This document shows positions 7,097 to 28,209 of a stretch of DNA of 64,000 nt, piece by piece. The stretch covers positions 1 to 64,000 of the forward strand of contig NW_021832611.1 in assembly GCF_006345805.1 (NCBI RefSeq), in the 5' to 3' direction. The translations under genes and the position numbers were made by a program. Within the stretch, counting starts at the first letter, position 1, and every line of letters begins with the position of its first letter. The notes below the pieces were generated by a model, which saw only the letters and a list, made by a program, of their open reading frames with translations, was not told the origin of the DNA and made no database searches. The DNA comes from Octopus sinensis. Its lineage: Eukaryota.

Positions 7097-7615
7097 TCAG
7101 TATATTCGAACATTGACACCAATTTGGTTTTCTAAATTCGAAATATTAAAGACAGTCCTAAACGCGAATTTGGCGCAGGCGACCATTAAATCGCTGTCGA
7201 AAAACTTCCAAGTAACATGTAGATGCACCGGCTATATGATAAATATATCAAAAAATACTATTGTGAATATATTGGGAAGTTTCCTTTTATAGTTAAAAGA
7301 GATTTTATCGCCTCCCAATGATGGACAATTCTCCAAGAAATAACGACATGCGTTGAAAGTTGTAAAAATAGGAATGTGTTTTGCAATGACTGCTTTCGGT
7401 TTAAAATTGCTGATTCGTTGGTCTAAAAATAAAATCGCATCTATACATATTGTTAGATTTATTTGTGTCTCTAATTCTTCGCCTGCATATACAATACATG
7501 AAGTCATGTTACAATTTTTTACATCAATGCTTGTATGTACCGATCCCTTGTTACAGGGATCAAATGGTATTTGACCACAAGTCACGTTAGACAAAATACA
7601 ACTTGTTATTATCAT
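7097..7615 (-). CDS. Secreted ML-domain (NPC2/MD-2-like) lipid-binding protein
   Basis: Signal peptide, FDPC..G..SIDVKNC...CIV..GEE, NACRYFLENCP, and last exon VTWKFFDSDLMVACAKF joined by a 27-nt phase-0 intron; stop at 7097. Confidence 0.65.
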
Positions 7616-7639
7616 GTTTTATCACAAACGCGAACCTAA

Positions 7640-8300
7640 TTTTTTATTTAACCCAGAATCACCAACAGTTAATTAGGGTAATAATTAGGTGATTCCAACA
7701 ATCCTCAAGATCTTTCTCAGCTTTTCCCGATGTTGGACTCTGGACATAACGCAAGTGCGGAACGGGCGGGGAGCAGTTTTTGTGAGGAATTGAATCGGGG
7801 TGATGTGCTTCTGGTTGTTGAGGTCTTGGTCTTTTGGCAGGTGGTCCTGTTGGATGGCTAAGAAACCCTTTCCATCTTTCTTAATAAGGTGGTCAAGCGG
7901 AGTTGGGATAATGTTGTTCAAATTTGAAATTTTCGTTATGCTAGCCGCGGCTCGGCATAGTGTAGTCTCAATTTTAAGGCGGTTAAACCATGAGAGATTA
8001 GTACCCCATGCGGCGCAGGCTAGCCAATTGTTGGTTCGATGAATTGTTTGTAGAGAGTGCCGAGAGCCGGGAACTGTGTCGGTGTTACTCCGCTAAAAAT
8101 TATTTTCAGGAAGACCAGATCAAGCTGAACCTCTGCCTGTTTACAAATGCCCCGTCAAATGCAGCCAGCCACCCGGTACAATCTTGTGGAAAGATCACCG
8201 AGCAAAGATGAAGTCCCTGGTCGAGTGCATCGGGATCACGTGACGTTTATTCGGTTTTTACCGTGGTCTTGGTTAAATAAAATAAAAAATCGACACTGGT
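7640..8300 (-). mobile_element. 3' fragment of Ingi/Vingi-like LINE
   Basis: TLYKQFIEPTIG*ACAAWG...CVMSRVQHREKLRKILRIVGIT* aligns with the 35291 element C-terminus; same 3' hairpin. Confidence 0.75.
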
Positions 8301-8499
8301 GTGAGTTGGTGCCAAATTTTTTAAACAAGTTCTATTAGATACTCCCTTATACTGATTTTGACTGATAAAACACCGTTAAAATTGAAAACTGTTAAAAGTA
8401 AGAAAAAGGGGAATTATTTTAATCCAATTCAAAATATATTACAAAATAAAAATGAATTTAATCATTTTCAATATGCTGAAAAATAACAAAATGCACATG

Positions 8500-9470
8500 A
8501 TACCTGAACACTCTAGCACTTGGAATAGACTCACGATTTACAGAATCGAATGCCTTTTTAACATCAATCCATGGCGAGTAGAGATTGTTCTGATACTCCT
8601 TATTGAACATTGATAAATAAGGGCCTGTTCTTTTGCACCCTGGCATCCCTTTCCCGTTCCCAGCTGGTTATCGGGAAGTAGACCAAATGAATCCACAAAG
8701 TCCAATAGTTTTGGTTGACGCATTTAGTTACTATCTTATGAAGATTAGCCACGCACGTGATTGACCGAAGATCGTTCAAGGTTTCGCAAACGTTTTTTGA
8801 GATCAAATATGTGAATCCAGTATAAAACCATTTCCAGGAATGTAACCTCCTCGGACTATTCTGCCAATCTCCTTGCATAGGGGGCCATGCAGCGAATCCA
8901 TTTTTTTAATAAAAAAGTTGTAGACACCATCGCAGCCACTTTCCTTCCAGTCAGGGCCGCACTTGATAATGTTCAGTCAAACTCTTCACTAAATTCGGGC
9001 GTCGGAGTCTCATAATCGTCCATCGAATAGAGAATTTCGACTTTTCCACTCCAAACATTTCTCAATTCATTCGAAGTCATTAAAGTTCAATTTAACAACT
9101 CAATTTTCACATAGATTCCTATAGAACCTTCGGTGGTTTAGCGCAAAGCATTTGCTGTACTTTCGGAACTCACTCATCGTTTTGTGAACAGATATTTGTT
9201 TCATTCTAAGCCGTATTAAATATTCAATTAATGATTGAATTCGGGATAGTTCTCCCTTCTTGCATTTCTTATAGGCACATATACACAGCACATCTATCAC
9301 TTTTTTGCTTTTCGGATATCGGGAATGCTTATTTACAGTAGTTTTTCACTATTTCTGATGGTGCATTAAAGTTGTAGTTTTTTTCTCCGTAGCTTTAACC
9401 CAGTTAGAACTAGTCCTCTTTTTATACGTTAAGTACTGAAATGCTTGCTATTAGTACTGATCCATAGTGA
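8500..9470 (-). mobile_element. R4-like retrotransposon, N-terminal and RT domain 0-3 fragment
   Basis: LRSITCVANLHKIVTK, NQLGTGKGCQGAKEQALI and WIDVKKAFDSV across frameshifts. Confidence 0.75.
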
Positions 9471-9970
9471 TAGTGTTCAAATGATATTTGACACAAGTCA
9501 CGTTAGACAAATAAAAATTGTCATTGTCAAATTTAATTAAAAACAGAATTTGATGTTAATTTAATCAAAAAAATTTTACTATTGAAAAAAGTATATAATT
9601 AAAAAAAACATTTATTTTAATAAAAAATGTTTTAATTGAAACAAATAACTGTATCTACACTGGTATTTATTGGATGGAATTTTAATAATTGATTTTTAAA
9701 ACAAATTTTATTATAGTTATTAGTAATAATGATATGTAATATTTTCTTTTTAATCTATATTTATTTATGTATAATATTAAAAAATATTTTTATTTAATGC
9801 GGCGAACCTTATCAACAATGGACATTATAGCAAATTTGAATATTTATACACACTAAACCGTTCTTATTCTTCTTTGTGGTGTAATTAGAATAATTAGACG
9901 GTTTGTTAAAATTTCTTATTTATTAATTTAAGGCAGTGAATCAGTTTTTAATATAAATATTAGTAGGGAG

Positions 9971-12450
9971 ATGCCTCTTTTATGGAATAAACCATTTGTA
10001 AAACTACCCCAACCAAGTGATTTAGAAGACGAAGACGAAATATTCGTATGTTGGAGGACAGGAGAAATATTCCGTGATTATGAGAGTTACTATGAACGAG
10101 TAATATTGTGCAACAGTCTGGTGTGGGGATGTTCTTTGATTGGTGGAGACGGACTGACTTTAAGCCAGGCAGTTGCTTGTGAGAGTGAATGTCGGAGAGA
10201 AGTGGAAGAACTAACAGATCCCGTAATAAAGGGGATATTATATACCCGGAATTTATTTGATGGGACTGATAAGGAGTCGTTGGTTGACAGTGTGTTTGAA
10301 TTTGTGAGTGAAGTGCTCTTTGTGGGAGAACCAATCGAATTCCGTGACAAAGAAGGGAATGGAATACGTGGGAGAGTTAGCAGAGTGGAGAGATTGGGGG
10401 AGTACTACGCCACTGCAGATGGAATAACATATCTGGCATATTCCCCACGGAGGATGATTGAATCTGTCACCAAGAGGAGAGTTGGGCTGTGTTTAAGTAT
10501 GGATTGGGAGAATGAAGACCTGGGGAATGTTTTTTCAAATATTCGGCCAGTAGTTGAGAAGAAAGGACAGTCTAAGGAGGCCAGAATTAGAAGAATTAAA
10601 CGACTGCAGTCTCATTACTGTTCACATTTACTGACTCCTAATGAAGATCTGCTTTGCCAAACTTTAAAGCCACTTCCGGACTATTTCCCACTGTCTCCCC
10701 TCCTTAGTGAGCATTTGGGAGACATTATGGCACTTGTTTACTTTGTTGATATGTTTGATCCGTTTTTGAGGAAATTCGGAGGGGCTTTTGATATTGACTG
10801 CGGTAAGAATATGTGAATATATTATAGAATTTGTCGAAAGGGCAGTTTTGGGAGACAGAGAGCGTATGTTCACATTTACAGGAGAATTGTTGAAGGTGAT
10901 CTGGGCCATGACGGGAGTGGACAAGAAGATTGATGTCCCATTTGGTTTACTTTCTTTTATATTTGGTAGAAATGACCCACAACAACATCTCAGAATTTGT
11001 TAGAAGACTTTTCTTTTGTGTGCGGAGGATAAATGTTCTTCCCAACAGTCTGAAGCATTGTTATTGACAAAGACGAGTGTATTTTGCTCATTGGAATATG
11101 AGGACATGCACTCATTTCCTTCTGAACAAAAACTACTCCTTCTATCCTACCTTGTCCAAATTATTTCAGCACATCCACACTTTCGTCCTCATCTGGAGGC
11201 ACTCAATAAAGACATTATTGCCCTCAACAAGGAAATGGCTGCTCTCACGGCAGATGAGGCCATGAAAATGATCAAATACAACAGAACAACTAACCAGATC
11301 AATCACGTCAAAACTGTTGGCAGGAAGGGAAAATGGTGGGATGAGAGTTCGGAGGACTCCGACGATCCGAACGAATCAAGAAGGGATTATAAACTCGCTA
11401 AAATACACAAACGTAAAGAACAAATCAAGACACAACTCGACAAGTATAACAATATTCAGTTATTGGGAATGGACAGACTATATAGGAAATATTATTTATT
11501 CTCACATGCTCTCTTTGTCGAGATTACTCCCAAAGCAGTATTTCTATTACAGTCAGTCATAGAGATATCTTTCTCGCCATAAACGAGTCAGACAACTTAC
11601 GATTGATCCCCACACTGAGACTTGGCAACAATTTGCCAATCGGTTTTCTCTCAATTTCAAAGATCCTCCTCACCCTCCACTCTCTTTTCAAGATGAGTTT
11701 GCCTCACTTATCACTCCTGTTTTTGATAACCCCGTTCCTCTCGACGGACTGCCTACATGGTCTGTTATACCAGACGAAGAAACATTAACTTTGTTGATGG
11801 ACTCACTCAGTACAACTGGCGTGCGGGAGATTGCATTAAAGAAGGCATTGATTAAAAATAGAGACAACATAAAATTGTCTACTCCCATCCCAGTCCATGT
11901 ACAAACTATATCTCCCCCAGTCATCTCACAGCTGTCCTACATGTCTTCTCTACTTACTCCAGATATAACTCACCAAATTCAGAGTTCACTTGAATCTCTG
12001 TCACTTCTCCCCCACAGACAACAAGTCACTCCTCTCGCCAATGCATTCGCGACTGTTGTACAGTCTGCCATTCCACAATCCATGCTTCCACCCTTTGGCA
12101 CTGCACTCAAAACCAGAAGGGGACGTAGATCCTCCGCGAAAAGACTGTCTCCTCTCCAGGATTGTGATTTTATGCAGTCTTGGATAACTCAGTTGAAACA
12201 AGTCACAAATATTTCCCAGATTGCCACAATGCTGAGTTTATTCCAACGCCATGTTTTGTGGGACTGTCCAACCACTGTTTACTGCAAGTCTTGTCGGAAA
12301 CTCAGAAAGTACGGGCTCGTCTTAACCTGTTCTGTTTGCTCATCTTATTACCACTCGGACTGTCTTCTAGATCATCCCATGGTTGTTTTTTTACATTACT
12401 TGTAGAATAGCAATGTTCCCTGGGTGTGTAATCAATGTGTTTCACACTAA
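9971..12450 (+). CDS. BAZ1A: ACF1/BAZ1A-family chromatin-remodelling subunit (WAC, DDT, WHIM/WSD, PHD; no bromodomain)
   Basis: WAC MPLLWNKPF...TGEIFRDYESYYER..LCNSLVWGCSL; LGMDRLYRKYY; LMDSLSTTGVRE.ALKKAL; terminal PHD CKSC...CSVCSSYYHSDC...WVCNQC; short GT-AG introns. Confidence 0.9.
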
Positions 12451-14455
12451 TATATTACATTTATATATTTGTTTTATTGATACTTTATTGTGAATATAAA
12501 CGCAGACAAAACAGAATGAAACAGTATAGCGTAGGGAGATTTGTCAACGTATAAATTTGTAAAAGAGAATATGCAAATTTACTTATATGTTGGGAAATTA
12601 GCAGACTGGATAGAGATTAGAAACAAATAATATCTGTCTGGAATATTTTATAAATTATGGTTATTGCGATAAAGGACGTGTTTTTGACATATTTTGTGTC
12701 TTGAAAATAGCTAGATCTCAGAATAAATGCTTAGAGATGAAATCACAAAATATTGCTATATTTTGAAACAGTTCATCTTTAAAACAAAATCTCTCAAATC
12801 TACATCAAAATTCTGTTCTTATAAATAGAATCTAAGTAGTTATAAATAGGACAATAAAATGGGTTATCATCAAAATTGAACACCACCTAAGAGTACAAAA
12901 ATCATATGATCCTCGCAATTAATTAAGAAAATATTCTAGCGGTTCTACAAATCATAACTTTTTTGAATTGTTGTTCATTTTGTTTATGTTTTGCCAAGCT
13001 CTGTTGTCTTCTGCTCGTATTATAATTAAATCTATCCAGAACAATCTTAACTATATTTTACGTACAACAATATATTACTTGTAAATAAAAAATGTACGTG
13101 ATAAAAATTGGTTAAAAAAATATGTATCCATAATATTAGTTGTACCTTAATTCGAAATCTTAACCCATGGATTAATGACTGATTAAGGAGGTGGCTACAG
13201 GTACCAAGGCCTCAAATTAATAAATTTGTCTCACTACAAATCAATTAAATGTACTGAGAAATCAACAAAAACATCCCGCTGCTTTTTGCTAATTATAATT
13301 TCTTCATTAGCAATGTCTGGAAAATTTGTGGCCAACTTTTTAAAATTTCCAACTTTTTTTGATTTTTCTATTTCCTTTCTAGATGTAGATTTAGTTTCTT
13401 CTGGGTCTATAATAATTTTACAAACTTGATGAATTACGTCGGTGAACTGGACAGTTTATACGGGCACACTTAACATTAATCAAGGAAATGAACAGATTGT
13501 TTTAATTACCTAATTTTAAATATATTTTTGTCTAAAGTCTATTTTTTCTTTCAATGGTATATTATTGGTTTTCAAAAATGATTGAATAGTTTTCGACATA
13601 CTCAGTTTTATTTTCTATTTAAGTATTTTGTGAAAACTTTATACAGAATAGAAATACATTTGATAGATTTCAGGTTATTAGAAATCATATTTTTTGAAAA
13701 TGAGATTGGTAAATAAAATGTAAAACCAATTATTTGGGCCTTCTCACCGTTAAAAATTTGTAATACTTCATTATGAATCAAGTAATGAAGAAAAATTATT
13801 TAATGGGCATTATAAAGTCATTTAATATTGTTTTCAGCAAATCATCTTGACAGAAACTAGCATTCAATTAACTTTTCTTTATAAATAATTTATATCAATT
13901 AATTAACTTCTTTCATACTTAGAATTGACTTAATCAAAGAAAAAACTAATTGACGAGACCGTCGACTAAGAAGTACCTTGGTGTGCTGTTAAACACTTAG
14001 TCGGCTCATATTTGCGTTCAAGACCAGCCCCGACTATACATAATGAATATGTTACTTATGTATTAAACACCAATATAATAAACTAGTCATTGCAGAATAT
14101 AAGGAGTTTAATAGAAATGACTGGTAAATAGTAAATGACCGCAAAAAATAATGAGCCTCCAAAAGTATCATCATCAAACATTCAAGTAAAAATCCTTATT
14201 GAGAAAGTATAAATTTAGAAAAGAAAATATGAATTTGGTTCAAAACGTCCGTAAAAAGTGCATTAAAACTTCTAAACGAAAATTTTATTTTAACACAGCT
14301 TTTTGCTATAAATTACACCTGTCAAACCTTTATTTCAAGGTTAACTAAAAATCCGCCGTAAAATAATAACATCTGAATGAAAAGGAACATAATTAAAAAA
14401 ATGACTTACATTAACTACAATAAAATCAACAAAATCTGATAAAAAATAAAGAGTT

Positions 14456-15225
14456 CTACTTCATGAATATGCTGATATTTCTCAAAAAACCTAAGATAAA
14501 TAAAAAATAAAAAAACCTGCATTCGCAGCCGTCGGCACGATATCTTGAACAAAAGTAAAAAGAAGTTCATTTTCTAAATACTCCTTAAACATGTCAGGTT
14601 TAAATTTCAACTTAAAATAATTATTTTTTGCCATAGTCTAATAGAATAAATAAATAATATTACAGAAGATTTATAATTTTTCTCATAACTTTCCCATGGC
14701 TGAATTTCAATAATAAGAATTCCACCTGGCAACAAATCAGCATAAATTCTCTGAAATGCTATTCGAAGACCTTCGTCGCCATTCACAAGATGAATCCACT
14801 TTGTGATACTCAAAGCCATAATAACATCATATTGCTTCTTTGGAATATATCCGTCAATACTATCGATAACATAATTTTCCTAAAAATAAAAATAAAATCT
14901 ATACGTAACAGAATGATATATTCGATGGAAATGATTCATTTCTATTATTGTTGGGATTAGAAATGCTGCGTGAGGCTCTTAGAATAAGTGATTTGTCAAT
15001 ATCTATTCCAAGGATATGTCGTGGTTTGAATCTTTTAGCAATCATAATAGTAATATATCCAACGTTGCAGCCAATGTCCAATATATTTTTGTCTTTAAAC
15101 CACTCACATTTCATAAGTGATAGTCTCGGATCTTCATTATTCTGAATTCTGTATCCATAATAACGATCGTAATTCCCATATGGAAAATATTTTTTCTTTG
15201 TTTTTTTCTTATTAATATTAGTCAT
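14456..15225 (-). CDS. MEPCE: 7SK methylphosphate capping enzyme / Bin3
   Basis: [63 protein letters not shown]; ends [11 protein letters not shown]. Confidence 0.92.
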
Positions 15226-15359
15226 TTTTACGTTTAAAATTGCAACAAAATTGAATGCCACACAACCTTTATAATTATATTTTTTTAAGAAATAAAATAG
15301 TGTAAAATATAAAGTAAATTGATTAATAATTAACAAAAATAGAAAATACTATTAGTCTG

Positions 15360-15829
15360 TGCCAGAAGTATTCGTTGCCTCACGGGCAGGGGAACGATAA
15401 CGAGAATTGACCCCCGGATGAAAACTAGCCTCCTTCGGAATCAAACTCACGACTGTCCAGATCCATAGCTTATTCTTCAGCCAAACGTACATCTACGTAT
15501 ACAAAACGTGTGTGCAGCCAGTCCTCACATATGGCTACGAGGGCTGGTACGGTACGGAGGAGAGTGACTACCTGATCAAACAGTTGGAAAAGACAAGACG
15601 TTTCGCTATGAAATTGGCTTACGGAGTACAACTTGACGGAAGGTTAAAAGACTCACAAGAATCCTCTGTGCCCACGATCCGGATGGTCTGGAGAATTGTC
15701 GTCAAACATGACTACAAATTGGGGATACGCATGGAAAGAGACACTTCGGTGCCTTGTCTTTATCTCCCCGTTGATGATTTCTTCCTTGTTTTTCTTTTTC
15801 TTTTCGCTCAATAAACACTATTCTATTCT
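15360..15829 (+). mobile_element. Chimeric retro-insertion: antisense SINE head fused to LINE 3' fragment, 11-bp TSD
   Basis: TSD ctattagtctg at 15349-15359 and 15830-15840; absent at the matching site near 28190; 15360-15485 matches SINE 42258-42392; then YKTCVQPVLTYGYEGW, AATAAA and (CTATT) tail. Confidence 0.8.
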
Positions 15830-16756
15830 CTATTAGTCTGGTCAAATAATTTTATTTATGAAAATAAAATTTCCTACTTATAAAGCTGAGGATTACCGTT
15901 GAATTTTTCAAGTATGAAAGAAAACTGGATTTTTGCTAAAAAGAATTCCAAAAAGATTCAATAATTTCTCATCTTTTGAACGGGAATTTTCATTATTCAC
16001 AGCACCATTCGCTTTTAATGCTTAAATGCAGATAAAAGATTACAAATGAAATTTTTAGAAATCCAATCGTATTCTATACTAAATGCAAAATATTTGGAGG
16101 TTGGAATATCTTATTTCTTTACGCTTCTTTTTGGAAAGTTTAAACTTTAAAAAATTTTCTACCAAAATAATTTCTATGTTGGGTTTGAAAAATGTTTGTA
16201 AACAACTTTTTTTATTTATAAAATTAACAAAAACTGTTCATTGAATACAGCTCACAAATGAAAATTTATCGGCTTTAATTAAAATCGGAATTATGTCAAA
16301 AATATCAATAATTTAGAAGTAGTTTCAAGCACGATATAAAGATGATTAGATTTTCTCATTTTTGTTTTTACTATAAATTCGGCCTTAAAACGAAATTGAT
16401 TTGACACCCTTAGTTTAAATGCTAGGATAGTAAAAACCTGAGTTTCTAATAAATGTTTTAAAATTAACTTTTTGTTAATTTTTATATAAAATACAAGAAT
16501 ATTAATTGGTTTGTTAAGTTTTTCTGACAATTTAAAATTATTGATTAAATTCTAAATTTTCCCATTTCCAAAATCTGCCGTCAATTTGACGGGAACTAAA
16601 AATGGCAAATTTGAGAGATTTAACTGTATATAGATAATCTGCAATGGTAGCAAGTCCAATCCTAAAAGGATTGTTTGCACCTGAAAAAATAGTCTATAGT
16701 CCTTAAAAATTCATCTTTGACCAGTAATAAAAACCCATAAAAAGAATAAAGTTTGG

Positions 16757-17671
16757 TTAGTAAAGGAAAATTTTAATAGCTAGATTAAAGCTATAGTTTG
16801 AATCGAATTCTAAATTAATAACATAAATATTAAAACTTTTCACTGTTTTTAGATTTCATAAGTAGATATTTTTTTCTTTTAAGAATCAACATAAAACAAA
16901 TAAAAGTGATTGTAATCAAAGAAATAATTCCAATAAAGATTATATAATTTTTATTTGATTTCCATAAGGTCTCTGAAATTCACAAATGAAAAAATCAACC
17001 AGGTTTTTTATTAAATGCAACTTCTAAAAATTAAAAAAAGTAATAGCTTACGATCACTTTTAGTTTTACTCTTTGTGGCGGAAACTAAAAGTTTAAAACA
17101 TATAAATCACATGCGCTCGTCGTGGTGGTGGCTAAAATATTTAAACATATAAATCACTTGTAGTTGTGCTCTTCGTGGTGGGGACTAAAATATTAAAACA
17201 TATGAATCACTTGTAGTTGTGCTCTTCGTCGTGGGGACTAAAATATTAAAACATACAAATTACTTGTAGTTTTACTCTTCGTGGTGGTGGCTAAAATATT
17301 AAAACATATGAATCACTTGTAGTTGTGCTCTTCGTCGTGGGGACTAAAATATTAAAACATATAAATCACTTATAGTTCTGCCTACTTGTCTGCAGACTAA
17401 AATATAAAATTTTAATTTTGTTAACCCTTTTTTTTATTTATGTCATTGGAATTTGCATATTTCATTATTTCATTGTCATTATTTCTTCTTTGTCTCTGCA
17501 AAACATGAAAATTTTAAAGCAAACCCTTGGAGGGCCTGTTTGCCAATAATTAATTGTTCGTATATCTTTGATTTCTTTTGAAGCATTTGTTATTTGTTCT
17601 ATACAAATAAAAATGTAAAAATAGATATCACCTGTACATAAAATTAATATTAGAAACAATATGAAAAACAT
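16757..17671 (-). CDS. Type-I membrane mucin-like protein, short paralog (7 micro-exons, 190 aa predicted)
   Basis: Hand-spliced 573-nt open frame: signal peptide MFFILFLILILCT, Thr-rich 27/21-nt exons, TM YIIFIGIISLITITFICFMLIL + KRKK, tail FDSNYSFNLAIKIFLY*; all introns GT-AG, about 26-34 nt. Confidence 0.8.
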
Positions 17672-19439
17672 TATTCTTCACGATAAAAAACTAATTTATA
17701 TTCTTTATAATTCTAATAATTCATTTTTGGCATAGTTGTCGACCTATTATTTATGTAGTTCCGACATTAATTACAGCCGATAAATTTTCATTAAAGATAT
17801 AGACATTAGAACCTTTCTTTTATAAATTAATTATCTGATTAAAAATAAGCTTGCAGAAGTCAACAAGATGCGGAATTATTTTAACAATAGTTGAATGCAT
17901 GTTACAGTATGTCAGAAGTTAAAAAAACATTTCTCGTAATAGAATGGACGATTCCCAGAACTAACGCAAATTAACAAATTTTTTTCTATCCAGATTAATT
18001 GATAATTCTCTTAGTTTTGGAAGTTTTAAAATGATATTCACATCTAGTTACGACCATTTTGTGGGGAAAGACTTTTTTCGATCATTTGTTGAGTACTAGA
18101 GAAACCACAAAGTTTACCTAAAAAGATCGAAAAAATTGACTTCATAAAAATCTACAAAGTTTATCCAAAAAAGAAGAAAATTGACCAAAATGTAGGCCTA
18201 ATAAAAATTTGGAAGATAATTTGTAGGCATTATTTTTTAGAAACATAAATTATGTAGAATCATGTAATATTAGACTTTTTCAGTTTTAACATTTCAGTCT
18301 TTTGTCAACATTTTATTAAAAACAAAAAACGCTTCATCTAATACTCAGTGGTTTGACATTGAACCACTTGAAGCCTTTCCAAAGGCAAAAAAATTCAACA
18401 ATATGTTCTGGAAAAGTCATATTTTAGTAAATAGTTCCCTTCGACTACTATTTTTCTAAAGTTTTAGACGGAAAATTTAAATGACTCGAAAATTGACGGA
18501 AAAATTGCCAAACAAAACCTAAAAAGCTTAAAATTAATTTTTTAACATAAAAATGTATTACATTTTTATAACAGAATAATTATTTTTGAGTTGACTTTGT
18601 CAACTTTTAGTAATTACAGAATGAATGATTCAGGTTCTTATTAATGTAGAAGAAATAGTAAAGCACACACCATTTAAAGGAATGAGAGGACTCTTTTGGG
18701 AAAGATCTCTTGTTTTAAAAAAACGATAAAGTTTAAAAACTAACGAATGCATATCGTTCTTGTTCCAATCAAATACCCAACCGCCGAGTTAGACTTTGGT
18801 GGTCAAAGAGGATTAACCATTGAAATGTTATTTTCATACACATTTTTTAGGTTTATGTCGGTTTATAAGTCTATTTAAACTATACTGTCTGAGAAAAATA
18901 TGCAGGCCAATTCGGTTACTATGTTTTGTGAGAACATCTTTGCAAAGCATTACAGTTCTTTTCTACGCCAACCAAGCCTCATCTGAATTCAAAGCAATAT
19001 CGAAATTTGTTTTCTAACTAGATTATTTGGTTTTTGAATAAACGAATTTCTATCGTTCCATTATTTATATGGTTTATTGTGAGTAGTCTTGATTTTAGAT
19101 TTTTGAAAAGAATTCAACAATCAGTTCAGCAACATTTACAAAACATTCGACCAAAACAGAATGAAGATACAAGTCATATCGGCCTTAACTTTTTTAAATG
19201 ACTGTTTTTCTGAAGAAATATAAAAAAGAACTTTTGACCTATATTTTATAAGGTCGAATTGCTTGACTTAGATTTGAAACGAATCATGCTTAATATATTT
19301 TTTAAATCCGAATTGGACATCTTAGTAACAACTCAGACACAAACAATAGTCATAACTAGCTAATCGAATACAGAGACAGTGGGAAGGAGTCGTTTGTGCC
19401 GATCAGCATAGACTTCTATATCCACTAAGCTAAACGGAT

Positions 19440-19671
19440 GGACAGATCCAACTCAACGCGCAGTTGCGGCCTTGCCGACGATTCCTGAGGTTTCGAAGGT
19501 AAGGGGGGCAAACAAAAAAGAGTCCGGAATACACAGGTATTTTGTTCTCTTTAATTCTTCGGCCTGAGCACTGGCAGAATCAGGATTTGCTGCAAATCTT
19601 GGATAGCATCGTCACCTAGAAAAGAGTCGACACAGGTGACTTCCTTCCCTGAAAGAAAAAGGTTCTCATCC
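19440..19671 (-). mobile_element. CRE-clade RLE fragment at the duplication junction
   Basis: EVTCVDSF...DSASAQAEELKRTKY; counterpart at 39410-39636. Confidence 0.65.
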
Positions 19672-19680: not shown

Positions 19681-20370
19681 GGTCTTCCGCAACACCAGTG
19701 TATGCCTTCACCCTATCCTCCACGCCAAGCACCGGCAGATAATTTTTGAAGTATTTTGACACTATTCCGTCCCAGGTCATGACGAAAGGGACGATCTTTA
19801 CCTTCGCCCGGTGGATCACTCCCAGTTCATTTGCTAGCAAGTGGTATTTGTGAAACTTTTCCACTTCGACCTGCTTGAGAAAATTTTGGGAAGTGATCCC
19901 CACCTCGATGAGTATAATTGTGTTGCTCGATTTGTCTTGAACAAATATGCCGGGCTTGTTATTTGGGCTAGCATAATCAGTCGAGAGGTATGTATCGACT
20001 CGGATTTCCACAAATTCATTGCTGGTAACAGATTGGACTGAATGCGTTTTTTAATTTTTTCGACTTTTTATTCCATATTTGCGACATAGATGTAAATGTA
20101 AACATTTGACCACTTCGTTATGGCGTCTAAGGTAGGGACCATTAAGCATTCGCCCATATCTGGTAGCAAGGTGATCGACGGTCTTCTTGGACGAGTTGCA
20201 GTGGCTGCATTTATTCTCTCCTTTGCTGAAAAACAAGTTCCGGTCTTGCAACAGGCACAGATTTGCTTTTTAAGTCCGGGGAGAATTGTTTCCATTAATT
20301 AACCATCCGCAAGCCTCATACACATCAACTTTGGTATCCTTAACAAGAAGTTGGTTCTGGTTTAAAGAGA
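19681..20370 (-). mobile_element. Duplicate of the R4-like C-terminal fragment
   Basis: Near-identical to 5662-6350. Confidence 0.8.
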
Positions 20371-21110
20371 TTCTAGAGATCCGTAAGGGACTTATACAAA
20401 ATGTATCCTAGTGCTTCTAAGAAGAAGTAAAACCCAGAACCTTGTGTAATCTCTCTTGCCAAATATCATTTTGATTATGTTCTAAATATCATTTTAAAGC
20501 CGTTTAATTATGATTTTTTGATAAATTTACAAATTCGAACGATTCTAAACAATCATCCTTTTAAAATGTACTTTTGAATTTTGTAACAATATCTGCAATC
20601 GCGACATTATTCGAAAATCTGAAATATTTCAATAGCTTTGGATAAGATCTTATAGACCAGAGATCGATAAAGGCTAGCTCATCAGCTTTTGGTGACTCTT
20701 TAAATTTCAAGTAGGTTCCTTCAATAAAAATTAAACCAAAATTGATAATACGCGATATTTTTATTAAAATGAAGGGAATCTTTCAAATTTTGAAGATATC
20801 CAATAGGTGACTCACGAAAGAAAGCTATAAAAAAACTTGTCAAAATATTTAGTTTGAGAATTAATTTTTAAATATTGGCAACACAAAAAGGAATCCTCTT
20901 CCGGATTCTTTTTATGAATTAAAAAATTGCATATAGAATTATGACAATTTTTGGGTTCACTATAGATGTAAACAAAGTTTTTCGCATTTGAATCAAATCA
21001 AAATTAAGAAACAAAATTGCAGACCTGAACCTAGAATCAAACCACAAATTAGAATTGACTAGTAACGACCTTATTGAACTTTTGATTTTATTAAGTTAGG
21101 TTAATGAAAT

Positions 21111-21625
21111 TCAGTATATTCGACATTGACACCATTTGGTTTTCTAAATTCGAAATATAAAGACAGTCCTAAACGCGAATTTGGCGCAGGCGACCATTAA
21201 ATCGCTGTCGAAAAACTTCCAAGTACATGTAGATGCACCGGCTATATGATAAATATATCAAAAAATACTATTGTGAATATATTGGGAAGTTTCCTTTTAT
21301 AGTTAAAAGAGATTTTATCGCCTCCCAATGATGGACAATTCTCCAAGAAATAACGACATGCGTTGAAAGTTGTAAAAATAGGAATGTGTTTTGCAATGAC
21401 TGCTTTCGGTTTAAAATTGCTGATTCGTTGGTCTAAAAATAAAATCGCATCTATACATATTGTTAGATTTATTTGTGTCTCTAATTCTTCGCCTGCATAT
21501 ACAATACATGAAGTCATGTTACAATTTTTTACATCAATGCTTGTATGTACCGATCCCTTGTTACAGGGATCAAATGGTATTTGACCACAAGTCACGTTAG
21601 ACAAAATACAACTTGTTATTATCAT
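21111..21625 (-). pseudogene. ML/NPC2-like duplicate; last exon frameshifted as assembled
   Basis: Copy of 7097-7615 with several 1-bp deletions in the last exon (may be sequencing error). Confidence 0.5.
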
Positions 21626-21649
21626 GTTTTATCACAAACGCGAACCTAA

Positions 21650-22300
21650 TTTTTTATTTAACCCAGAATCACCAACAGTTAATTAGGGTAATAATTAGAT
21701 GATTCCAACAATCCTCAAGACCTTTCTCAGCTTTTCCCGATGTTGGACTCTGGACATAACGCAAGTGCGGAACGGGCGGGGAGCAGTTTTTGTGAGGAAT
21801 TGAATCGGGGTGATGTGCTTCTGGTTGTTGAGGTCTTGGTCTTTGGCAGGTGGTCCTGTTGGATGGCTAAGAAACCCTTTCCATCTTTCTTAATAAGGTG
21901 GTCAAGCGGAGTTGGGATAATGTTGTTCAAATTGAAATTTTCGTTATGCTAGCCGCGGCTCGGCATAGTGTAGTCTCAATTTTAAGGCGGTTAACCATGA
22001 GAGATTAGTACCCCATGCGGCGCAGGCTAGCCAATTGTTGGTTCGATGAATTGTTTGTAGAGAGTGCCGAGAGCCGGGAACTGTGTCGGTGTTACTCCGC
22101 TAAAAATTATTTTCAGGAAGACCAGATCAAGCTGAACCTCTGCCTGTTTACAAATGCCCCGTCAAATGCAGCCAGCCACCCGTACAATCTTGTGGAAAGA
22201 TCACCGAGCAAAGATGAAGTCCCTGGTCGAGTGCATCGGGATCACGTGACGTTTATTCGGTTTTTACCGTGGTCTTGGTTAAATAAAATAAAAAATCGAC
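21650..22300 (-). mobile_element. Duplicate of the Vingi-like 3' fragment
   Basis: Near-identical to 7640-8300. Confidence 0.75.
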
Positions 22301-22425
22301 ACTGGTGTGAGTTGGTGCCAAATTTTTTAAACAAGTTCTATTAGATACTCCCTTATACTGATTTTGACTGATAAACACCGTTAAAATTGAAAACTGTTAA
22401 AAGTAAGAAAAAGGGGAATTATTTT

Positions 22426-23091
22426 GGTACTTTTGTCGAAGTGGTCGCAGTTTTTTTAGAAGATAATTAAAATTAATTAATTTTTTTAGTGAAATAGATT
22501 ATTTAATTATAACCCTCTATCAATAATTTAAATGGTTATTAAAATTATTTAAAAATTTATTTACCAATTTAGTCATTTTTAGTACGCGGCATCCAAATTC
22601 CAGGACTGTAGAAGGAATTTATGTCTTTTACAATCTGTGCAAAAGATTCCTTAAGTTCTGTATTTGTTTTCGCCACATAAATTCTGAAAAAATAACTAAC
22701 TAAAAAAACCTGCGAAATAAGATCCCAGATGATGTCTTACAGCTCCTCTTTGAGCTTTATTCTTGCATTTTGCACTTCCCCGTGATTTTGAAAGGATATC
22801 CACATTTTGCAGAAAATGCACTGCATCCTCCTTATTTATTGGGAGCTGTCGGAATGATGTTGCATAAGTCCACAACAGAATTTTCCATGTGACCTATAGT
22901 GCCAGTTTATATCAATATTAGGTACATGCTCGCCATAATATTAAAAAAATTAGAAAATAAATTAGTAAAAAATTTAATAATATTTTAAATTATTGATAGA
23001 GCGACTTAAATAAAATAATATATTCCACCTCAAAAATTATTAGATTTTTTAAAAGGCCTAAAAAAACTGCGACCACTTCGACAAAAGTACC
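22426..23091 (-). mobile_element. 666-bp non-autonomous DNA transposon, Merlin-like
   Basis: TIRs GGTACTTTTGTCGAAGTGGTCGCAGTTTTTT and its complement; 8-bp TSD attatttt; empty site at about 8414-8421; internal EDAVHFLQK resembles a Merlin transposase N-terminus. Confidence 0.85.
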
Positions 23092-23189
23092 ATTATTTTA
23101 ATCCAATTCAAAATATATTACAAAATAAAAATGAATTAATCATTTCAATATGCTGAAAAATAACAAAATGCACATGATACCTGAACACT

Positions 23190-24135
23190 CTAGCACTTGG
23201 AATAGACTCACGATTTACAGAATCGAATGCCTTTTTAACATCAATCCATGGCGAGTAGAGATTGTTCTGATACTCCTTATTGAACATTGATAAATAAGGG
23301 CCTGTTCTTTTGCACCCTGGCATCCCTTTCCCGTTCCCAGCTGGTTATCGGGAAGTAGACCAAATGAATCCACAAAGTCCAATAGTTTTGGTTGACGCAT
23401 TTAGTTACTATCTTATGAAGATTAGCCACGCACGTGATTGACCGAAGATCGTTCAAGGTTTCGCAAACGTTTTTTGAGATCAAATATGTGAATCCAGTAT
23501 AAAACCATTTCCAGGAATGTAACCTCCTCGGACTATTCTGCCAATCTCCTTGCATAGGGGGCCATGCAGCGAATCCATTTTTTTTAATAAAAAAGTTGTA
23601 GACACCATCGCAGCCACTTTCCTTCCAGTCAGGGCCGCACTTGATAATGTTCAGTCAAACTCTTCACTAAATTCGGGCGTCGGAGTCTCATAATCGTCCA
23701 TCGAATAGAGAATTTCGACTTTCCACTCCAAACATTTCTCAATTCATTCGAAGTCATTAAGTTCAATTTAACAACTCAATTTTCACATAGATTCCTATAG
23801 AACCTTCGGTGGTTTAGCGCAAAGCATTTGCTGTACTTTCGGAACTCACTCATCGTTTTGTGAACAGATATTTGTTTCATTCTAAGCCGTATTAAATATT
23901 CAATTAATGATTGAATTCGGGATAGTTCTCCCTTCTTGCATTTCTTATAGGCACATATACACAGCACATCTATCACTTTTTTGCTTTTCGGATATCGGGA
24001 ATGCTTATTTACAGTAGTTTTTCACTATTTCTGATGGTGCATTAAAGTTGTAGTTTTTTTCTCCGTAGCTTTAACCCAGTTAGAACTAGTCCTCTTTTTA
24101 TACGTTAAGTACTGAAATGCTTGCTATTAGTACTG
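23190..24135 (-). mobile_element. Duplicate of the R4-like RT fragment
   Basis: Near-identical to 8500-9470. Confidence 0.75.
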
Positions 24136-24529
24136 ATCTATTGAAAAAAGTATATAATTAAAAAAAACATTTATTTTAATAAAAAATGTTTTAATTGAAA
24201 CAAATAACTGTATCTACACTGGTATTTATTGGATGGAATTTAATAATTGATTTTTAAAAAAAACAAATTTTATATAGTTATTAGTAATAATGATATGTAA
24301 TATTCTTTTTTATCTATATTTATTTATGTATAATATTAAAAAATATTTTTATTTAATGCGGCGAACCTTATCAACAATGGACATTATAGCAAATTTGAAT
24401 ATTTATACACACTAAACCGTTCTTATTCTTCTTTTTGTGGTGTAATTAGATAATTAGACGGTTTGTTAAAATTTCTTATTTATTAATTAAGGCAGTGAAT
24501 CAGTTTTTAATATAAATATTAGTAGGGAG

Positions 24530-27004
24530 ATGCTCTTTTATGGAATAAACCATTTGTAAAACTACCCCAACAAGTGATTTAGAAGACGAAGACGAAATAT
24601 TCGTATGTTGGAGGACAGGAGAAATATTTCGTGATTATGAGAGTTACTATGAACGAGTAATATTGTGCAACAGTCTGGTGTGGGATGTTCTTTGATTGGT
24701 GGAGACGGACTGACTTTAAGCCAGGCAGTTGCTTGTGAGAGTGAATGTCGGAGAGAAGTGGAAGAACTAACAGATCCCGTAATAAAGGGGATATTATATA
24801 CCCGGAATTATTTGATGGGACTGATAAGGAGTCGTTGGTTGACAGTGTGTTTGAATTTGTGAGTGAAGTGCTCTTTGTGGGAGAACCAATCGAATTCCGT
24901 GACAAAGAAGGGAATGGAATACGTGGGAGAGTTAGCAGAGTGGAGAGATTGGGGAGTACTACGCCACTGCAGATGGAATAACATATCTGGCATATTCCCC
25001 ACGGAGGATGATTGAATCTGTCACCAAGAGGAGAGTTGGGCTGTGTTTAAGTATGGATTGGGAGAATGAAGACCTGGGGAATGTTTTTTCAAATATTCGG
25101 CCAGTAGTTGAGAAGAAAGGACAGTCTAAGGAGGCCAGAATTAGAAGAATTAAACGACTGCAGTCTCATTACTGTTCACATTTACTGACTCCTAATGAAG
25201 ATCTACTTTGCCAAACTTTAAAGCCACTTCCGGACTATTTCCCACTGTCTCCCCTCCTTAGTGAGCATTTGGGAGAAATTATGGCACTTGTTTACTTTGT
25301 TGATATGTTTGATCCGTTTTTGAGGAAATTCGGAGGTGCTTTTGATATTGACTGCGGTAAGAATATGTGAATATATTATAGAATTTGTCGAAAGGGCAGT
25401 TTTGGGAGACAGAGAGCGTATGTTCACATTTACAGGAGAATTGTTGAAGGTGCTCTGGGCCATGACGGGAGTGGACAAGAAGATTGATGTCCCATTTGGT
25501 TTACTTTCTTTTATATTTGGTAGAAATGACGCACAACAACATCTCAGAATTTGTTAGAAAGACTTTTCTTTTGTGTGCGGAGGATAAATGTTCTTCCCAA
25601 CAGTCTGAAGCATTGTTATTGACAAAGACGTGTGTATTTTGCTCATTGGAATATGAGGACATGCACTCATTTCCTTCTGAACAAAAACTACTCCTTCTAT
25701 CCTACCTTGTCCAAATTATTTCAGCACATCCACACTTTCGTCCTCATCTGGAGGCACTCAATAAAGACATTATTGCCCTCAACAAGGAAATGGCTGCTCT
25801 CACGGCAGATGAGGCCATGAAAATGATCAAATACAACAGAACAACTAACCAGATCAATCACGTCAAAACTGTTGGCAGGAAAGGCAAATGGTGGGATGAG
25901 AGTTCGGAGGACTCCGACGATCCGAACGAATCAAGAAGGGATTATAAACTCGCTAAAATACACAAACGCAAAGAACAAATCAAGACACAACTTGACAAGT
26001 ATAACAATATTCAGTTATTGGGAATGGACAGACTATATAGGAAATATTATTTATTCTCACATGCTCTCTTTGTCGAGATTACTCCAAAAGCAGTATTTCT
26101 ATTACAGTCAGTCATAGAGATATCTTTCTCGCCATAAACGAGTCAGACAACTTACGATTGATCCCACACTGAGACTTGGCAACAATTTGCCAATCGGTTT
26201 TCTCTCAATTTCAAAGATCCTCCTCACCCTCCACTCTCTTTTCAAGATGAGTTTGCCTCACTTATCACTCCTGTTTTTGATAACCCCGTTCCTCTCGACG
26301 GACTGCCTACATGGTCTGTTATACCAGACGAAGAAACATTAACTTTGTTGATGGACTCACTCAGTACAACTGGCGTGCGGGAGATTGCATTAAAGAAGGC
26401 ATTGATTAAAAATAGAGACAACATAAAATTCTCTACTCCCATCCCAGTCCATGTGCAAACTATATCTCCCCCAGTCATCTCACAGCTGGCCTACATGTCT
26501 TCTTTACTTACTCCAGATATAACTCACCAAATTCAGACTTCACTTGAATCTCTCTCACTTCTCCCCCACAGACAACAAGTCACTCCTCTCGCCAATGCAT
26601 TTGCGACTGTTGTACAGTCTGCCATTCCACAATCCATGCTTCCACCCTTTGGCACTGCACTCAAAACTAGGAGGGGACGTAGATCCTCCGCGAAAAGACT
26701 GTCTCCTCTCCAGGATTGTGATTTTATGCAGTCTTGGATAACTCAGTTGAAACAAGTCACAAATATGTCCCAGATTGCCACAATGCTGAGTTTATTCCAA
26801 CGCCATGTTTTGTGGGACTGTCCAACCACTGTTTACTGCAAGTCTTGTCGGAAACTCAGAAAGTACGGGCTCGTCTTAACCTGTTCTGTTTGCTCATCTT
26901 ATTACCACTCGGACTGTCTTCTAGATCATCCCATGGTTGTTTTTTTACATTACTTGTAGAATAGCAATGTTCCCTGGGTGTGTAATCAATGTGTTTCACA
27001 CTAA
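24530..27004 (+). pseudogene. BAZ1A: BAZ1A duplicate; frameshifted in its 5' part as assembled
   Basis: About 1% substitutions versus 9971-12450, plus several 1-bp deletions within 24530-25000; may be intact if these are errors. Confidence 0.65.
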
Positions 27005-27295
27005 TATATTACATTTATATATTTGTTTTATTGATACTTTATTGTGAATATAAACGCAGACAAAACAGAATGAAACAGTATAGCGTAGGGAGATTTGTCA
27101 ACGTATAAATTTGTAAAAGAGAATATGCAAATTTACTTATATGTTGGGAAATTAGCAGACTGGATAGAGATTAGAAACAAATAATATCTGTCTGGAATAT
27201 TTTATAAATTATGGTTATTGCGATAAAGGACGTGTTTTTGACATATTTTGTGTCTTGAAAATAGCTCAACAAAATCTGATAAAAAATAAAGAGTT

Positions 27296-28061
27296 CTACT
27301 TCATGAATATGCTGATATTTCTCAAAAACCTAAGATAAATAAAAAATAAAAAAACCTGCATTCGCAGCCGTCGGCACGATATCTTGAACAAAAGTAAAAA
27401 GAAGTTCATTTTCTAAATACTCCTTAAACATGTCAGGTTTAAATTTCAACTTAAAATAATTATTTTTGCCATAGTCTAATAGAATAAATAAATAATATTA
27501 CAGAAGATTTGTAATTTTTCTCATAACTTTCCATGGCTGAATTTCGATAATAAGAATTCCACCTGGCAACAAATCAGCATAAATTCTCTGAAATGCTATT
27601 CGAAGACCTTCGTCGCCATTCACAAGATGAATCCACTTTGTGATACTCAAAGCCATAATAACATCATATTGCTTCTTTGGAATATATCCGTCAATACTAT
27701 CGATAACATAATTTTCCTAAAAAAAAAATAAAATCTATACGTAACAGAATGATATATTCGATGGAAATGATTCATTTCTATTATTGTTGGGATTAGAAAT
27801 GCTGCGTGAGGCTCTTAGAATAAGTGATTTGTCAATATCTATTCCAAGGATATGTCGTGGTTTGAATCTTTTAGCAATCATAATAGTAATATATCCAACG
27901 TTGCAGCCAATGTCCAATATATTTTTGTCTTTAAACCACTCACATTTCATAAGTGATAGTCTCGGATCTTCATTATTCTGAATTCTGTATCCATAATAAC
28001 GATCGTAATTCCCATATGGAAAATATTTTTTCTTTGTTTTTTTCTTATTAATATTAGTCAT
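27296..28061 (-). pseudogene. MEPCE: MEPCE duplicate; 1-bp deletions as assembled
   Basis: Copy of 14456-15225 with single-base losses at about 27326 and 27531. Confidence 0.65.
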
Positions 28062-28209
28062 TTCTACGTTTAAAATTACAACAAAATTGAATGCCACACT
28101 ACCTTATTAAATTATATTTTTTTAGAAATAAAATAGTGTAAAATATAAGTAATTGATTAATAATTAACAAAAATAGAAAATAATATTAGTCTGGTTAAAT
28201 AATTTTATT

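What the first reader, a model, noticed from the sequence alone, without database searches (positions are those of the whole stretch)
16757..17671. Short paralog with 7 micro-exons shows a ~15-fold expansion of the ectodomain
Unit 1 holds the same gene with a clean 573-nt spliced frame (190 aa) and only 7 micro-exons (six of 27 nt, one of 21 nt, all multiples of 3), versus about 109 in unit 2. Ectodomain length is therefore set by exon copy number. This gives either two paralogs or two alleles of very different stalk length, as expected for a length-polymorphic surface antigen (inference).
Basis: partly seen in the sequence, partly recalled or inferred. Interest (0 to 1): 0.7.

Follow-up and report, generated by a model that had tools for sequence, protein, structure and literature searches.

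The report
Short paralog of micro-exon mucin gene
A small gene for a membrane-anchored, threonine-rich (mucin-like) protein is built from seven 27-base mini-exons split by 26-base introns, and its tandem duplicate 12 kb away carries about 110 of the same 53-base exon-plus-intron units, so stalk length is set by repeat number; this is an unusual gene architecture, but so far supported by sequence alone.

Summary
Seven are micro-exons (six of 27 nt, one of 21 nt), all phase 1.

The product has a signal peptide, about 48 aa, a 61-aa stalk (48% Thr, PTTKSTTT units), a transmembrane helix and a KRKKY tail. No homolog or Pfam family was found.

The second copy (35210-28850) has 110 units of 53 nt. 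The two copies lie in a real-looking tandem duplication of about 14 kb joined at a non-homologous junction, so they are paralogs rather than alleles.

Both copies keep all non-array splice sites. The TM/tail part shows Ka/Ks 0.19.

Caveat: the long array is not a clean frame as assembled. 17 interior exons are 25-26 nt, and the first stop falls at codon 462. The window's duplicated flanks show many 1-nt homopolymer indels, so these are probably consensus errors.

The host genome is most likely a dicyemid, because housekeeping genes here also have 26-40-nt introns.

"Length-polymorphic surface antigen" is untested. This is a new variant of the VNTR-mucin and micro-exon-gene theme.

The parts
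17632..17671 (-). Short copy exon 1 (40 nt): ATG at 17671, hydrophobic signal-peptide-like start MFFILFLILILCT
   Evidence: Kyte-Doolittle mean 1.89 over the first 19 aa. Conserved in the long copy at 35210-35171.
17525..17598 (-). Short copy exon 2 (74 nt): EQITNASKEIKDIRTINYWQTGPPR, with an N-x-S sequon
   Evidence: The flanking introns are 33 and 29 nt, both GT..AG. 80% aa identity to the long copy.
17426..17495 (-). Short copy exon 3 (70 nt): RQRRNNDNEIMKYANSNDINKKK. It ends in phase 1 and so sets the frame of the array.
   Evidence: 40+74+70 = 184 nt, which leaves phase 1.
17058..17396 (-). Short micro-exon array: 7 phase-1 exons (17396-17370, 17343-17317, 17290-17264, 17237-17211, 17184-17158, 17131-17111, 17084-17058) separated by six 26-nt GT..AG introns. 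It encodes the 61-aa Thr-rich stalk.
   Evidence: The stalk is 48% Thr, 11% Ser and 13% Lys.
17000..17023 (-). 24-nt phase-1 exon (KVAFNKKP) between the array and the TM exon; possibly optional
   Evidence: Identical in the long copy at 29116-29093. Skipping it keeps the frame (510/549-nt alternatives).
16844..16972 (-). Exon encoding the transmembrane helix IIFIGIISLITITFICFMLIL and a KRKKY stop-transfer tail
   Evidence: Hydropathy 2.83 at aa 141-161. 93% aa identity to the long copy. Ka/Ks 0.19 for the C-terminal part.
16757..16809 (-). Last exon (53 nt, KFDSNYSFNLAIKIFLY, stop TAA at 16759-16757) after a 34-nt intron
   Evidence: The same stop and frame are conserved in the long copy at 28902-28850, whereas the intron-retained readings end at different stops in the two copies.
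28850..35210 (-). Long paralog. Exons 35210-35171, 35137-35064, 35034-34965; 110-unit array 34935-29151; exons 29116-29093, 29065-28937, 28902-28850.
   Evidence: Nominal product if every unit were intact: 3354 nt, 1117 aa. As assembled, the frame is open through unit 35 and then shifts.
29151..34935 (-). Long micro-exon array: 110 units of 27-nt exon plus about 26-nt intron. It has higher-order blocks of 6, 10 and 3 units, and a Cys-bearing unit (ICRQVGRTT) recurs about 12 times.
   Evidence: TRF 109.3 copies, 84% matches. Unit parse and exon types.
5662..19671 (.). Tandem duplication unit 1 (about 14.0 kb; BAZ1A-like gene, Bin3/MePCE-like methyltransferase exon, short mucin-like gene)
   Evidence: Self-BLAST; junction analysis.
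19681..39636 (.). Tandem duplication unit 2 (about 20.0 kb; same genes, long array, extra retrotransposon). A 9-nt filler lies at 19672-19680.
   Evidence: Substitution divergence rises from 0.11% at the left end to 3-4% around the mucin-like gene.
35288..38148 (+). Non-LTR retrotransposon (APE + RT) present only in unit 2, 77 nt upstream of the long copy's ATG
   Evidence: Pfam Exo_endo_phos_2 / Exo_endo_phos. The empty site in unit 1 and the (AAT)n tail are seen. Alignment breaks.

Best explanation
The interval holds a real, lineage-restricted gene on the minus strand for a small type I membrane protein with a mucin-like stalk. Its parts are a signal peptide, a roughly 48-aa N-terminal segment, a Thr-rich stalk, one TM helix and a short basic cytoplasmic tail. 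The stalk is encoded by a minisatellite whose 53-nt unit is one 27-nt phase-1 exon plus one 26-nt intron. Because 53 is not a multiple of 3, the array is coding only after splicing. Gain or loss of whole units by unequal exchange or slippage, seen as 3-, 6- and 10-unit higher-order blocks, lengthens or shortens the stalk by 9 aa per unit without touching the frame. A tandem duplication of about 14 kb produced two paralogs that now carry 7 and about 110 units, i.e. a stalk of 61 aa against about 990 aa. SHOWN: the gene model; the splice-site and frame conservation in two copies; purifying selection on the TM/tail part; the unit counts; and that housekeeping genes in the window use the same ultra-short introns. 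INFERRED: that the introns are actually spliced; that the protein is O-glycosylated and at the cell surface; that the frame breaks in the long array are assembly errors; and that the genome is a dicyemid's.
For: (1) An exact 573-nt frame with 12 GT..AG introns of 26-34 nt. (2) Unspliced arrays are closed in all six frames. (3) The phase set by the N-terminal exons (184 nt, phase 1) is the only one that reads the downstream exon as a TM helix. (4) All 12 non-array splice sites and both stops are conserved in the second copy. The C-terminal Ka/Ks is 0.19 (4 nonsynonymous, 5 synonymous changes) and the N-terminal Ka/Ks is 0.79. (5) Among exon variants, the phase-1 frame gives 43% synonymous single-difference codons and no stops, against 13% and 24% in the other frames, with 1 and 9 variants containing stops there. 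(6) Recurrent exon variants are 27 nt in 10 of 11 types, while recurrent intron variants are 23, 24, 25, 26 and 31 nt. Length is therefore constrained in exons and not in introns. (7) The POLG gene in the same window has 26-, 27- and 40-nt introns at conserved protein positions. Such introns are documented only in dicyemids and myxobolid myxozoans (PMC13644364, PMC6543705, PMC6736024). (8) The duplication junction is non-homologous with a 9-nt filler. (9) No short-copy exon sequence occurs in the long array.
Against: There is no transcript or protein evidence. No homolog was found in 5.8 billion proteins, with or without the stalk, and no Pfam family passes its cut-off, so coding status rests on two recently diverged copies only. 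The long copy's frame is broken 17 times as assembled, and it has a retrotransposon 77 nt upstream of its ATG. The N-terminal exons evolve almost neutrally. It is untested whether a spliceosome can remove about 110 consecutive 26-nt introns spaced by 27-nt exons.
Confidence: 0.68

Rival explanations
1. Only the short copy is a working gene. The long copy is a decaying or runaway-expanded pseudogene whose frameshifts are real and whose promoter was hit by a retrotransposon.
For: Seventeen of the 110 exons are 25/26 nt. The first stop is at codon 462 and there are 23 stops in all. A non-LTR element lies 77 nt upstream of the ATG only in this copy.
Against: The frame-breaking changes are all deletions, and all but one pair are singletons. 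In units 36-100, indels outnumber substitutions in exons (23 against 10) and in introns (58 against 8). That is the same signature as the 14 homopolymer indels against 3 substitutions between the duplicated flanks, and as the different frameshifts in the two BAZ1A copies. The first 35 and last 10 units and all flanking exons and splice sites are intact.
Confidence: 0.2
2. The two copies are two haplotypes (alleles) of one locus that the assembler placed in tandem (false duplication). The finding would then be an allelic length polymorphism, not a paralog pair.
For: The left 2.7 kb of the units differs by only 0.11% substitutions. The probable source assembly merged PacBio and Illumina assemblies and needed haplotype merging (PMC6736024).
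Against: There are no Ns in the window. The junction joins unrelated sequence through a 9-nt filler, so there is no shared repeat on which an assembler could mis-join. Divergence reaches 3-4% with five insertions or deletions of 0.6-2.9 kb between the units. The short copy's micro-exon variants are all private.
Confidence: 0.12
3. The 53-nt arrays are non-coding minisatellites. Either the whole array lies in one intron, giving a stalk-less 129-aa membrane peptide that is also in frame, or there is no gene at all.
For: All exons around the array are phase 1, so skipping the array keeps the frame. No homologs exist. Concerted evolution could by itself keep GT/AG and the 27/26 partition uniform.
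Against: Exon length is fixed at 27 nt in recurrent variants while intron length varies by non-multiples of 3. There is an excess of synonymous differences and no stops specifically in the frame dictated by the signal-peptide exons. Every unit keeps GT and AG (105 and 109 of 110 in the raw parse). The composition is that of a mucin-like PTS domain.
Confidence: 0.1
4. The short copy is a collapsed assembly of a longer array.
For: Tandem arrays can collapse in assemblies.
Against: The neighbouring 5.8-kb array was assembled uncollapsed in the same contig. The short array has ordered, distinct units with private variants and orthologous first and last units.
Confidence: 0.05

Closest known systems
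Schistosoma mansoni polymorphic mucins (SmPoMuc)
   Same: The 9-aa mucin repeat is encoded by a 27-bp exon that is itself tandemly repeated with its intron. Repeat number varies between genes (1 to about 20 genomic copies). The genes are clustered paralogs, in a parasite (PMC2576457).
   Different: The SmPoMuc genomic unit is about 1 kb (27-bp exon plus long intron plus GA microsatellite), not 53 nt. SmPoMuc proteins are secreted, with a conserved C-terminal domain of 13 further exons and no TM anchor. There is no sequence similarity, and the phylum differs.
Schistosome micro-exon genes (MEGs), especially the membrane-anchored, O-glycosylated MEG-11/-14/-32.1
   Same: Both have a signal peptide and short symmetric exons of 6-36 bp that are multiples of 3. 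Some MEGs have a membrane anchor and predicted mucin-like O-glycosylation. Frame-neutral exon skipping is possible (PMC5825161).
   Different: MEG micro-exons are mostly non-repetitive and are not described there as arrays of identical units. Here only 36% of the short copy's CDS, but about 89% of the long copy's, lies in micro-exons. No homology was found, and MEGs are schistosome-specific.
Vertebrate membrane-tethered mucins and sialomucins with VNTR stalks (MUC1, CD43, endomucin-like)
   Same: Type I topology, a Thr/Ser/Pro-rich extended stalk, and stalk length set by tandem-repeat number (topology and examples from general knowledge).
   Different: Vertebrate mucin VNTRs sit inside one large exon (PMC13345508 abstract). 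Here every 9-aa repeat is its own exon. There is no SEA, EGF or other domain.
Other exon+intron tandem amplifications: LPA kringle IV-2 copy-number variation, spider Flag silk iterated exon/intron modules, collagen 54-bp exons (own knowledge, not checked here)
   Same: Protein length is changed by amplifying a genomic unit that contains exon(s) and intron(s). Introns are homogenised together with exons.
   Different: Those units are hundreds of bases to 5.5 kb long. A 53-nt unit giving about 1 intron per 53 nt is, to my knowledge, not described.

Membership tests
Mucin-like type I membrane glycoprotein (functional class, not a homology family) | N-terminal signal peptide | tested here: inconclusive
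   There is a hydrophobic start, MFFILFLILILCT, with mean hydropathy 1.89, conserved in both copies. No dedicated predictor was available.
Mucin-like type I membrane glycoprotein (functional class, not a homology family) | Pro/Thr/Ser-rich tandem-repeat domain | tested here: met
   The stalk is 48% Thr, 11% Ser and 5% Pro, in 9-aa units such as IPTTKSTTT.
Mucin-like type I membrane glycoprotein (functional class, not a homology family) | Single C-terminal TM helix followed by a basic stop-transfer sequence | tested here: met
   aa 141-161 IIFIGIISLITITFICFMLIL, hydropathy 2.83, followed by KRKKY. Ka/Ks 0.19.
Mucin-like type I membrane glycoprotein (functional class, not a homology family) | Dense O-glycosylation and surface location | not testable with these tools
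   Needs biochemistry, lectin or antibody staining.
Schistosome micro-exon genes (MEG) | About 80% of the CDS in symmetric exons of 6-36 bp (PMC5825161) | tested here: inconclusive
   Short copy: 207 of 573 nt (36%). Long copy, nominal: about 89%. All micro-exons are phase 1-1.
Schistosome micro-exon genes (MEG) | Sequence homology to a described MEG family, or schistosome origin | tested here: not met
   No protein hits at all. The genome has 26-40-nt introns in housekeeping genes, and its BAZ1A is only 36-40% identical to any database protein. It is therefore not a schistosome.
SmPoMuc | 27-bp exon 2 repeated in about 1-kb genomic units, plus a conserved 13-exon C-terminal domain | tested here: not met
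   The exon is 27 nt, but the unit is 53 nt, and the C-terminal part is a TM anchor of 3 exons.
Pfam PF01456 Mucin-like glycoprotein (trypanosome) | Score above the gathering cut-off (34.7 bits) | tested here: not met
   15.8 bits, E = 0.014, a compositional match over aa 71-132.

The most novel reading that the evidence does not exclude
An 'exon-intron minisatellite'. A 53-nt unit (27-nt exon plus 26-nt intron) is amplified to about 110 copies, giving a 6.4-kb gene with about 115 introns, roughly one per 53 nt. Its roughly 990-aa mucin stalk exists only because an ultra-short-intron spliceosome removes every unit's intron. Unit number, and possibly frame-neutral exon skipping, tunes the height of a surface glycoprotein in a dicyemid-type parasite. 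It would be the most compact known case of protein-length variation by exon+intron repeat number, and a natural substrate for asking how 26-nt introns flanked by 27-nt exons are recognised.
Probability: 0.4. Interest if true: 0.7.

Novelty: new variant of a known kind. Interest (0 to 1): 0.5.

Why it matters
If the arrays are spliced as predicted, this locus shows that a coding VNTR can be built from units whose length is not a multiple of three, with splicing restoring the frame. It would also show that such a unit can shrink to 53 nt in a lineage with the shortest animal introns.

It gives a ready-made test substrate for intron definition at the physical limit: 26-nt introns separated by 27-nt exons, about 110 in a row.

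It is also a candidate surface-coat gene in a very poorly known parasite group. The short paralog is the clean reference copy that makes the long, error-prone array interpretable.

Tried and rejected
(1) My first gene model ended at TAA 16830 (510 nt). A second model lacked the 24-nt exon (549 nt). Both are in frame, but the 573-nt model is preferred because its last intron, exon and stop are conserved in both copies, while the intron-retained readings stop at different places.

(2) Schistosome origin or SmPoMuc/MEG membership was my first guess from the 27-nt exons. I rejected it. SmPoMuc units are about 1 kb, no schistosome protein matches, and BAZ1A is at most 40% identical to anything in the databases.

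(3) Myxozoan origin was considered because of the <30-nt introns (PMC13644364). It is disfavoured. The 18 best BAZ1A hits looked up include no cnidarian (those with names are all bilaterians). The window is TE-rich with long intergenic DNA. An apparently intact POLG argues specifically against Henneguya, which lacks a mitochondrial genome (its loss of mtDNA-replication genes is my own knowledge).

(4) Protein homology searches with the full protein and with the stalk removed both found nothing. Pfam gave only sub-threshold compositional hits.

(5) Rfam and tRNA scans of the window found nothing.

(6) A metagenome scan with a 40-nt unit pattern gave 0 hits.

The single representatives job was therefore spent on the BAZ1A ORF, for taxon placement.

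(8) Regex and greedy array parsers failed on variant donors and were replaced by consensus-alignment parsing.

(9) A test for faster evolution of the 5' exons than the introns (13/184 against 2/91 substitutions) is not significant (Fisher p = 0.16).

Full report
OBSERVATION

The interval lies on the minus strand of an AT-rich stretch (GC 0.26 for 16001-18000). There are 13 exons of 40, 74, 70, 27, 27, 27, 27, 27, 21, 27, 24, 129 and 53 nt, totalling 573 nt and 190 aa. They are separated by 12 GT..AG introns of 33, 29, 29, 26 (six times), 34, 27 and 34 nt.

Tandem Repeats Finder sees the 53-nt period at 17053-17381 (6.3 copies) and at 29146-34912 (109.3 copies). The unspliced arrays are closed in all six frames.

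Two shorter in-frame variants exist: 510 nt and 549 nt. The 573-nt version is preferred because its last intron, last exon and stop are conserved in the second copy.

THE PRODUCT

The 190-aa protein begins with a hydrophobic leader (MFFILFLILILCT). A 48-aa polar segment follows, with an N-x-S sequon and an RRQRR/RKQRR basic cluster.

Next comes a 61-aa stalk that is 48% Thr, 11% Ser and 13% Lys, made of units such as IPTTKSTTT. After an 18-aa linker (K VAFNKKP ETLWKSNKNY) lies a 21-aa hydrophobic helix (aa 141-161, hydropathy 2.83) followed by KRKKY and a 25-aa tail.

That is the layout of a small mucin-like type I membrane protein. O-glycosylation and surface location are inferred from composition, not shown.

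No Pfam family passes its cut-off; the best is the trypanosome 'Mucin' model at 15.8 bits against a cut-off of 34.7. Two searches of the 5.8-billion-protein collection, with and without the low-complexity stalk, returned nothing.

IS IT REALLY CODING?

Six lines of evidence, all from sequence:

(i) The phase left by the three 5' exons (184 nt, phase 1) is the one in which the downstream 129-nt exon reads as a TM helix. All micro-exons are multiples of 3.

(ii) The second copy keeps every non-array splice site, the ATG and the stop.

(iii) Between the copies the C-terminal part has Ka/Ks 0.19 (4 nonsynonymous, 5 synonymous changes). The N-terminal part has 0.79.

(iv) Among exon variants of both arrays, the phase-1 frame has 43% synonymous single-difference codons and no stops. 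The other frames have 13% and 24%, with 1 and 9 variants containing stops.

(v) Recurrent exon variants are 27 nt in 10 of 11 types. Recurrent intron variants are 23, 24, 25, 26 and 31 nt. Length changes that are not multiples of 3 are therefore tolerated in the introns but not in the exons.

(vi) Ultra-short introns are normal for this genome. The POLG gene at about 47300-50750 has 26-, 27- and 40-nt introns exactly where the conserved protein sequence is interrupted.

There is no transcript evidence. That is the main weakness.

THE PARTNER COPY AND THE '15-FOLD' CLAIM

The long copy (ATG 35210, stop 28850) has the same flanking exons and an array of 110 units (34935-29151). That gives 110 units against 7, about 16-fold. 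The nominal product would be 3354 nt, or 1117 aa.

The first unit (the Cys-bearing VCRQVGRT) and the last two units (the 21-nt exon and SATKSKTK) are orthologous in both copies. The difference therefore lies in the core.

The long array has higher-order structure. There are blocks of six units (types 5,6,7,6,3,4), blocks of ten units, and towards the 3' end three-unit blocks with a 31-nt intron variant. This is the footprint of unequal exchange of multi-unit blocks. The Cys-bearing unit recurs about 12 times.

As assembled, the long copy is not a clean frame. Seventeen exons, all in units 36-100, are 25 or 26 nt. The frame shifts at unit 36, the first stop is at codon 462, and there are 23 stops.

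I think most of these are consensus errors, for five reasons:
- They are all deletions.
- All but one pair are singletons.
- No exon is 24 or 30 nt.
- In units 36-100, indels outnumber substitutions in exons (23 against 10) and in introns (58 against 8).
- The same signature is seen outside the array. The leftmost 2.7 kb of the duplicated units differs by 3 substitutions but 14 one-base homopolymer indels, and the two BAZ1A-like copies each carry different frameshifts.

Real decay cannot be excluded. A non-LTR retrotransposon sits 77 nt upstream of the long copy's ATG.

PARALOGS OR ALLELES?

Self-comparison shows a head-to-tail duplication. Unit 1 is 5662-19671 and unit 2 is 19681-~39636. Each carries a BAZ1A-like gene, a Bin3/MePCE-like methyltransferase exon and the mucin-like gene.

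The junction joins the right end of unit 1 to the left end of unit 2 through a 9-nt filler, with no shared repeat. The window has no Ns.

The units differ by five insertions or deletions of 0.6-2.9 kb. Substitution divergence rises from 0.11% at the left to 3-4% around the mucin-like gene. None of the short copy's micro-exon sequences occurs verbatim in the long array.

This favours true tandem paralogs. The divergence gradient suggests either gene conversion in the left part or a duplication formed between diverged haplotypes; this is inference. A haplotype mis-join remains possible at about 0.1 and needs reads to exclude.

THE ORGANISM

The BAZ1A-like WAC ORF finds only 36-40% identical proteins. 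Those with names are all bilaterian, including Lingula, Strigamia, Bulinus, Priapulus, Tegillarca and Gordionus. No close relative is therefore in the databases.

According to PMC13644364 and PMC6543705, introns under 30 nt occur among animals only in dicyemids and myxobolid myxozoans. The Dicyema japonicum assembly is 36.7% GC and 49% repeats, was built from PacBio RS II plus Illumina, and needed haplotype merging (PMC6736024). This fits the TE-rich, indel-noisy window.

A dicyemid is my best inference, not a demonstration.

COMPARISON WITH KNOWN SYSTEMS

The closest analogue is SmPoMuc of Schistosoma mansoni. There a 27-bp exon encoding a 9-aa mucin repeat is tandemly repeated with its intron, but the unit is about 1 kb and the protein is secreted.

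Schistosome micro-exon genes share the symmetric micro-exons, the signal peptide and, for MEG-11/-14/-32.1, a membrane anchor with predicted heavy O-glycosylation. Homology was tested and not found, and the genome is not a schistosome's.

Vertebrate mucin VNTRs lie within a single large exon.

The locus works like these systems but is a member of none. A 53-nt exon+intron unit, about one intron per 53 nt, is to my knowledge undescribed.

VERDICT

The short copy is a clean, probably functional paralog and the best reference for the family.

The 16-fold difference in unit number is real in the assembly. 'Length-polymorphic surface antigen' remains a hypothesis.

Novelty: a new variant of the VNTR-mucin and micro-exon theme. 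Interest is moderate (0.5), limited by the absence of expression data and by assembly noise.

Noticed in passing
window 35288-38148 (+); motif at 35450-35473: A non-LTR retrotransposon (APE endonuclease plus RT) whose ORF begins with a 2A-like 'ribosome-skipping' motif, DVEQNPGP. It ends in an (AAT)n tail. It is present only in duplication unit 2, and the empty site is visible in unit 1 near 17748.
   Followed up: partly
window 5662-8420 vs 19681-22425, and 9971-12405 vs 24560-26990: The assembly carries many 1-nt homopolymer indels: 14 indels against 3 substitutions in 2.7 kb between the duplicated units. The two BAZ1A-like copies are frameshifted at different places. Any ORF call in this window should allow for consensus errors.
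   Followed up: yes
window 47736-47761, 47957-47983, ~48306-48345 (+): The DNA polymerase gamma gene has 26-, 27- and 40-nt GT..AG introns interrupting conserved exonuclease motifs. This places the genome among the very few animals with introns under 30 nt (dicyemids or myxobolids).
   Followed up: partly
window 5662-39636: Substitution divergence between the two tandem units climbs steadily from 0.11% (left) to 3-4% (right, around the mucin-like gene). This suggests partial gene conversion, or a duplication formed between diverged haplotypes.
   Followed up: partly
window 29151-34935 (-): A Cys-bearing unit (ICRQVGRTT, with its own 25-nt intron variant) recurs about 12 times at block boundaries of the long array. 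A long product would carry a regular series of unpaired cysteines, whereas the short product has one.
   Followed up: no
window 17426-17495 / 34965-35034 (-): A basic cluster, RRQRR (short copy) or RKQRR (long copy), lies in the N-terminal segment and resembles a proprotein-convertase site. If cleaved, a peptide of about 25 aa would be released from the stalk.
   Followed up: no
window 17000-17057 (-): All exons from exon 3 to the TM exon are phase 1. The 24-nt exon, any micro-exon, or the whole array can therefore be skipped without breaking the frame. This leaves room for isoforms with different stalk lengths or none at all.
   Followed up: partly
window 43239-46101 (-), 58643-61321 (+), 170-552 (+): Several further reverse-transcriptase elements (RVT_1) carry a Cys/His-rich C-terminal region (…CQPHxCRCG…LSC…). 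They are 43-47% GC against about 30% for the surrounding DNA.
   Followed up: no
window 55704-56201 (-): An ORF with a weak Spin-doc/C2H2-type zinc finger match (E = 0.0036, below cut-off), possibly a domesticated or decayed transposase fragment.
   Followed up: no
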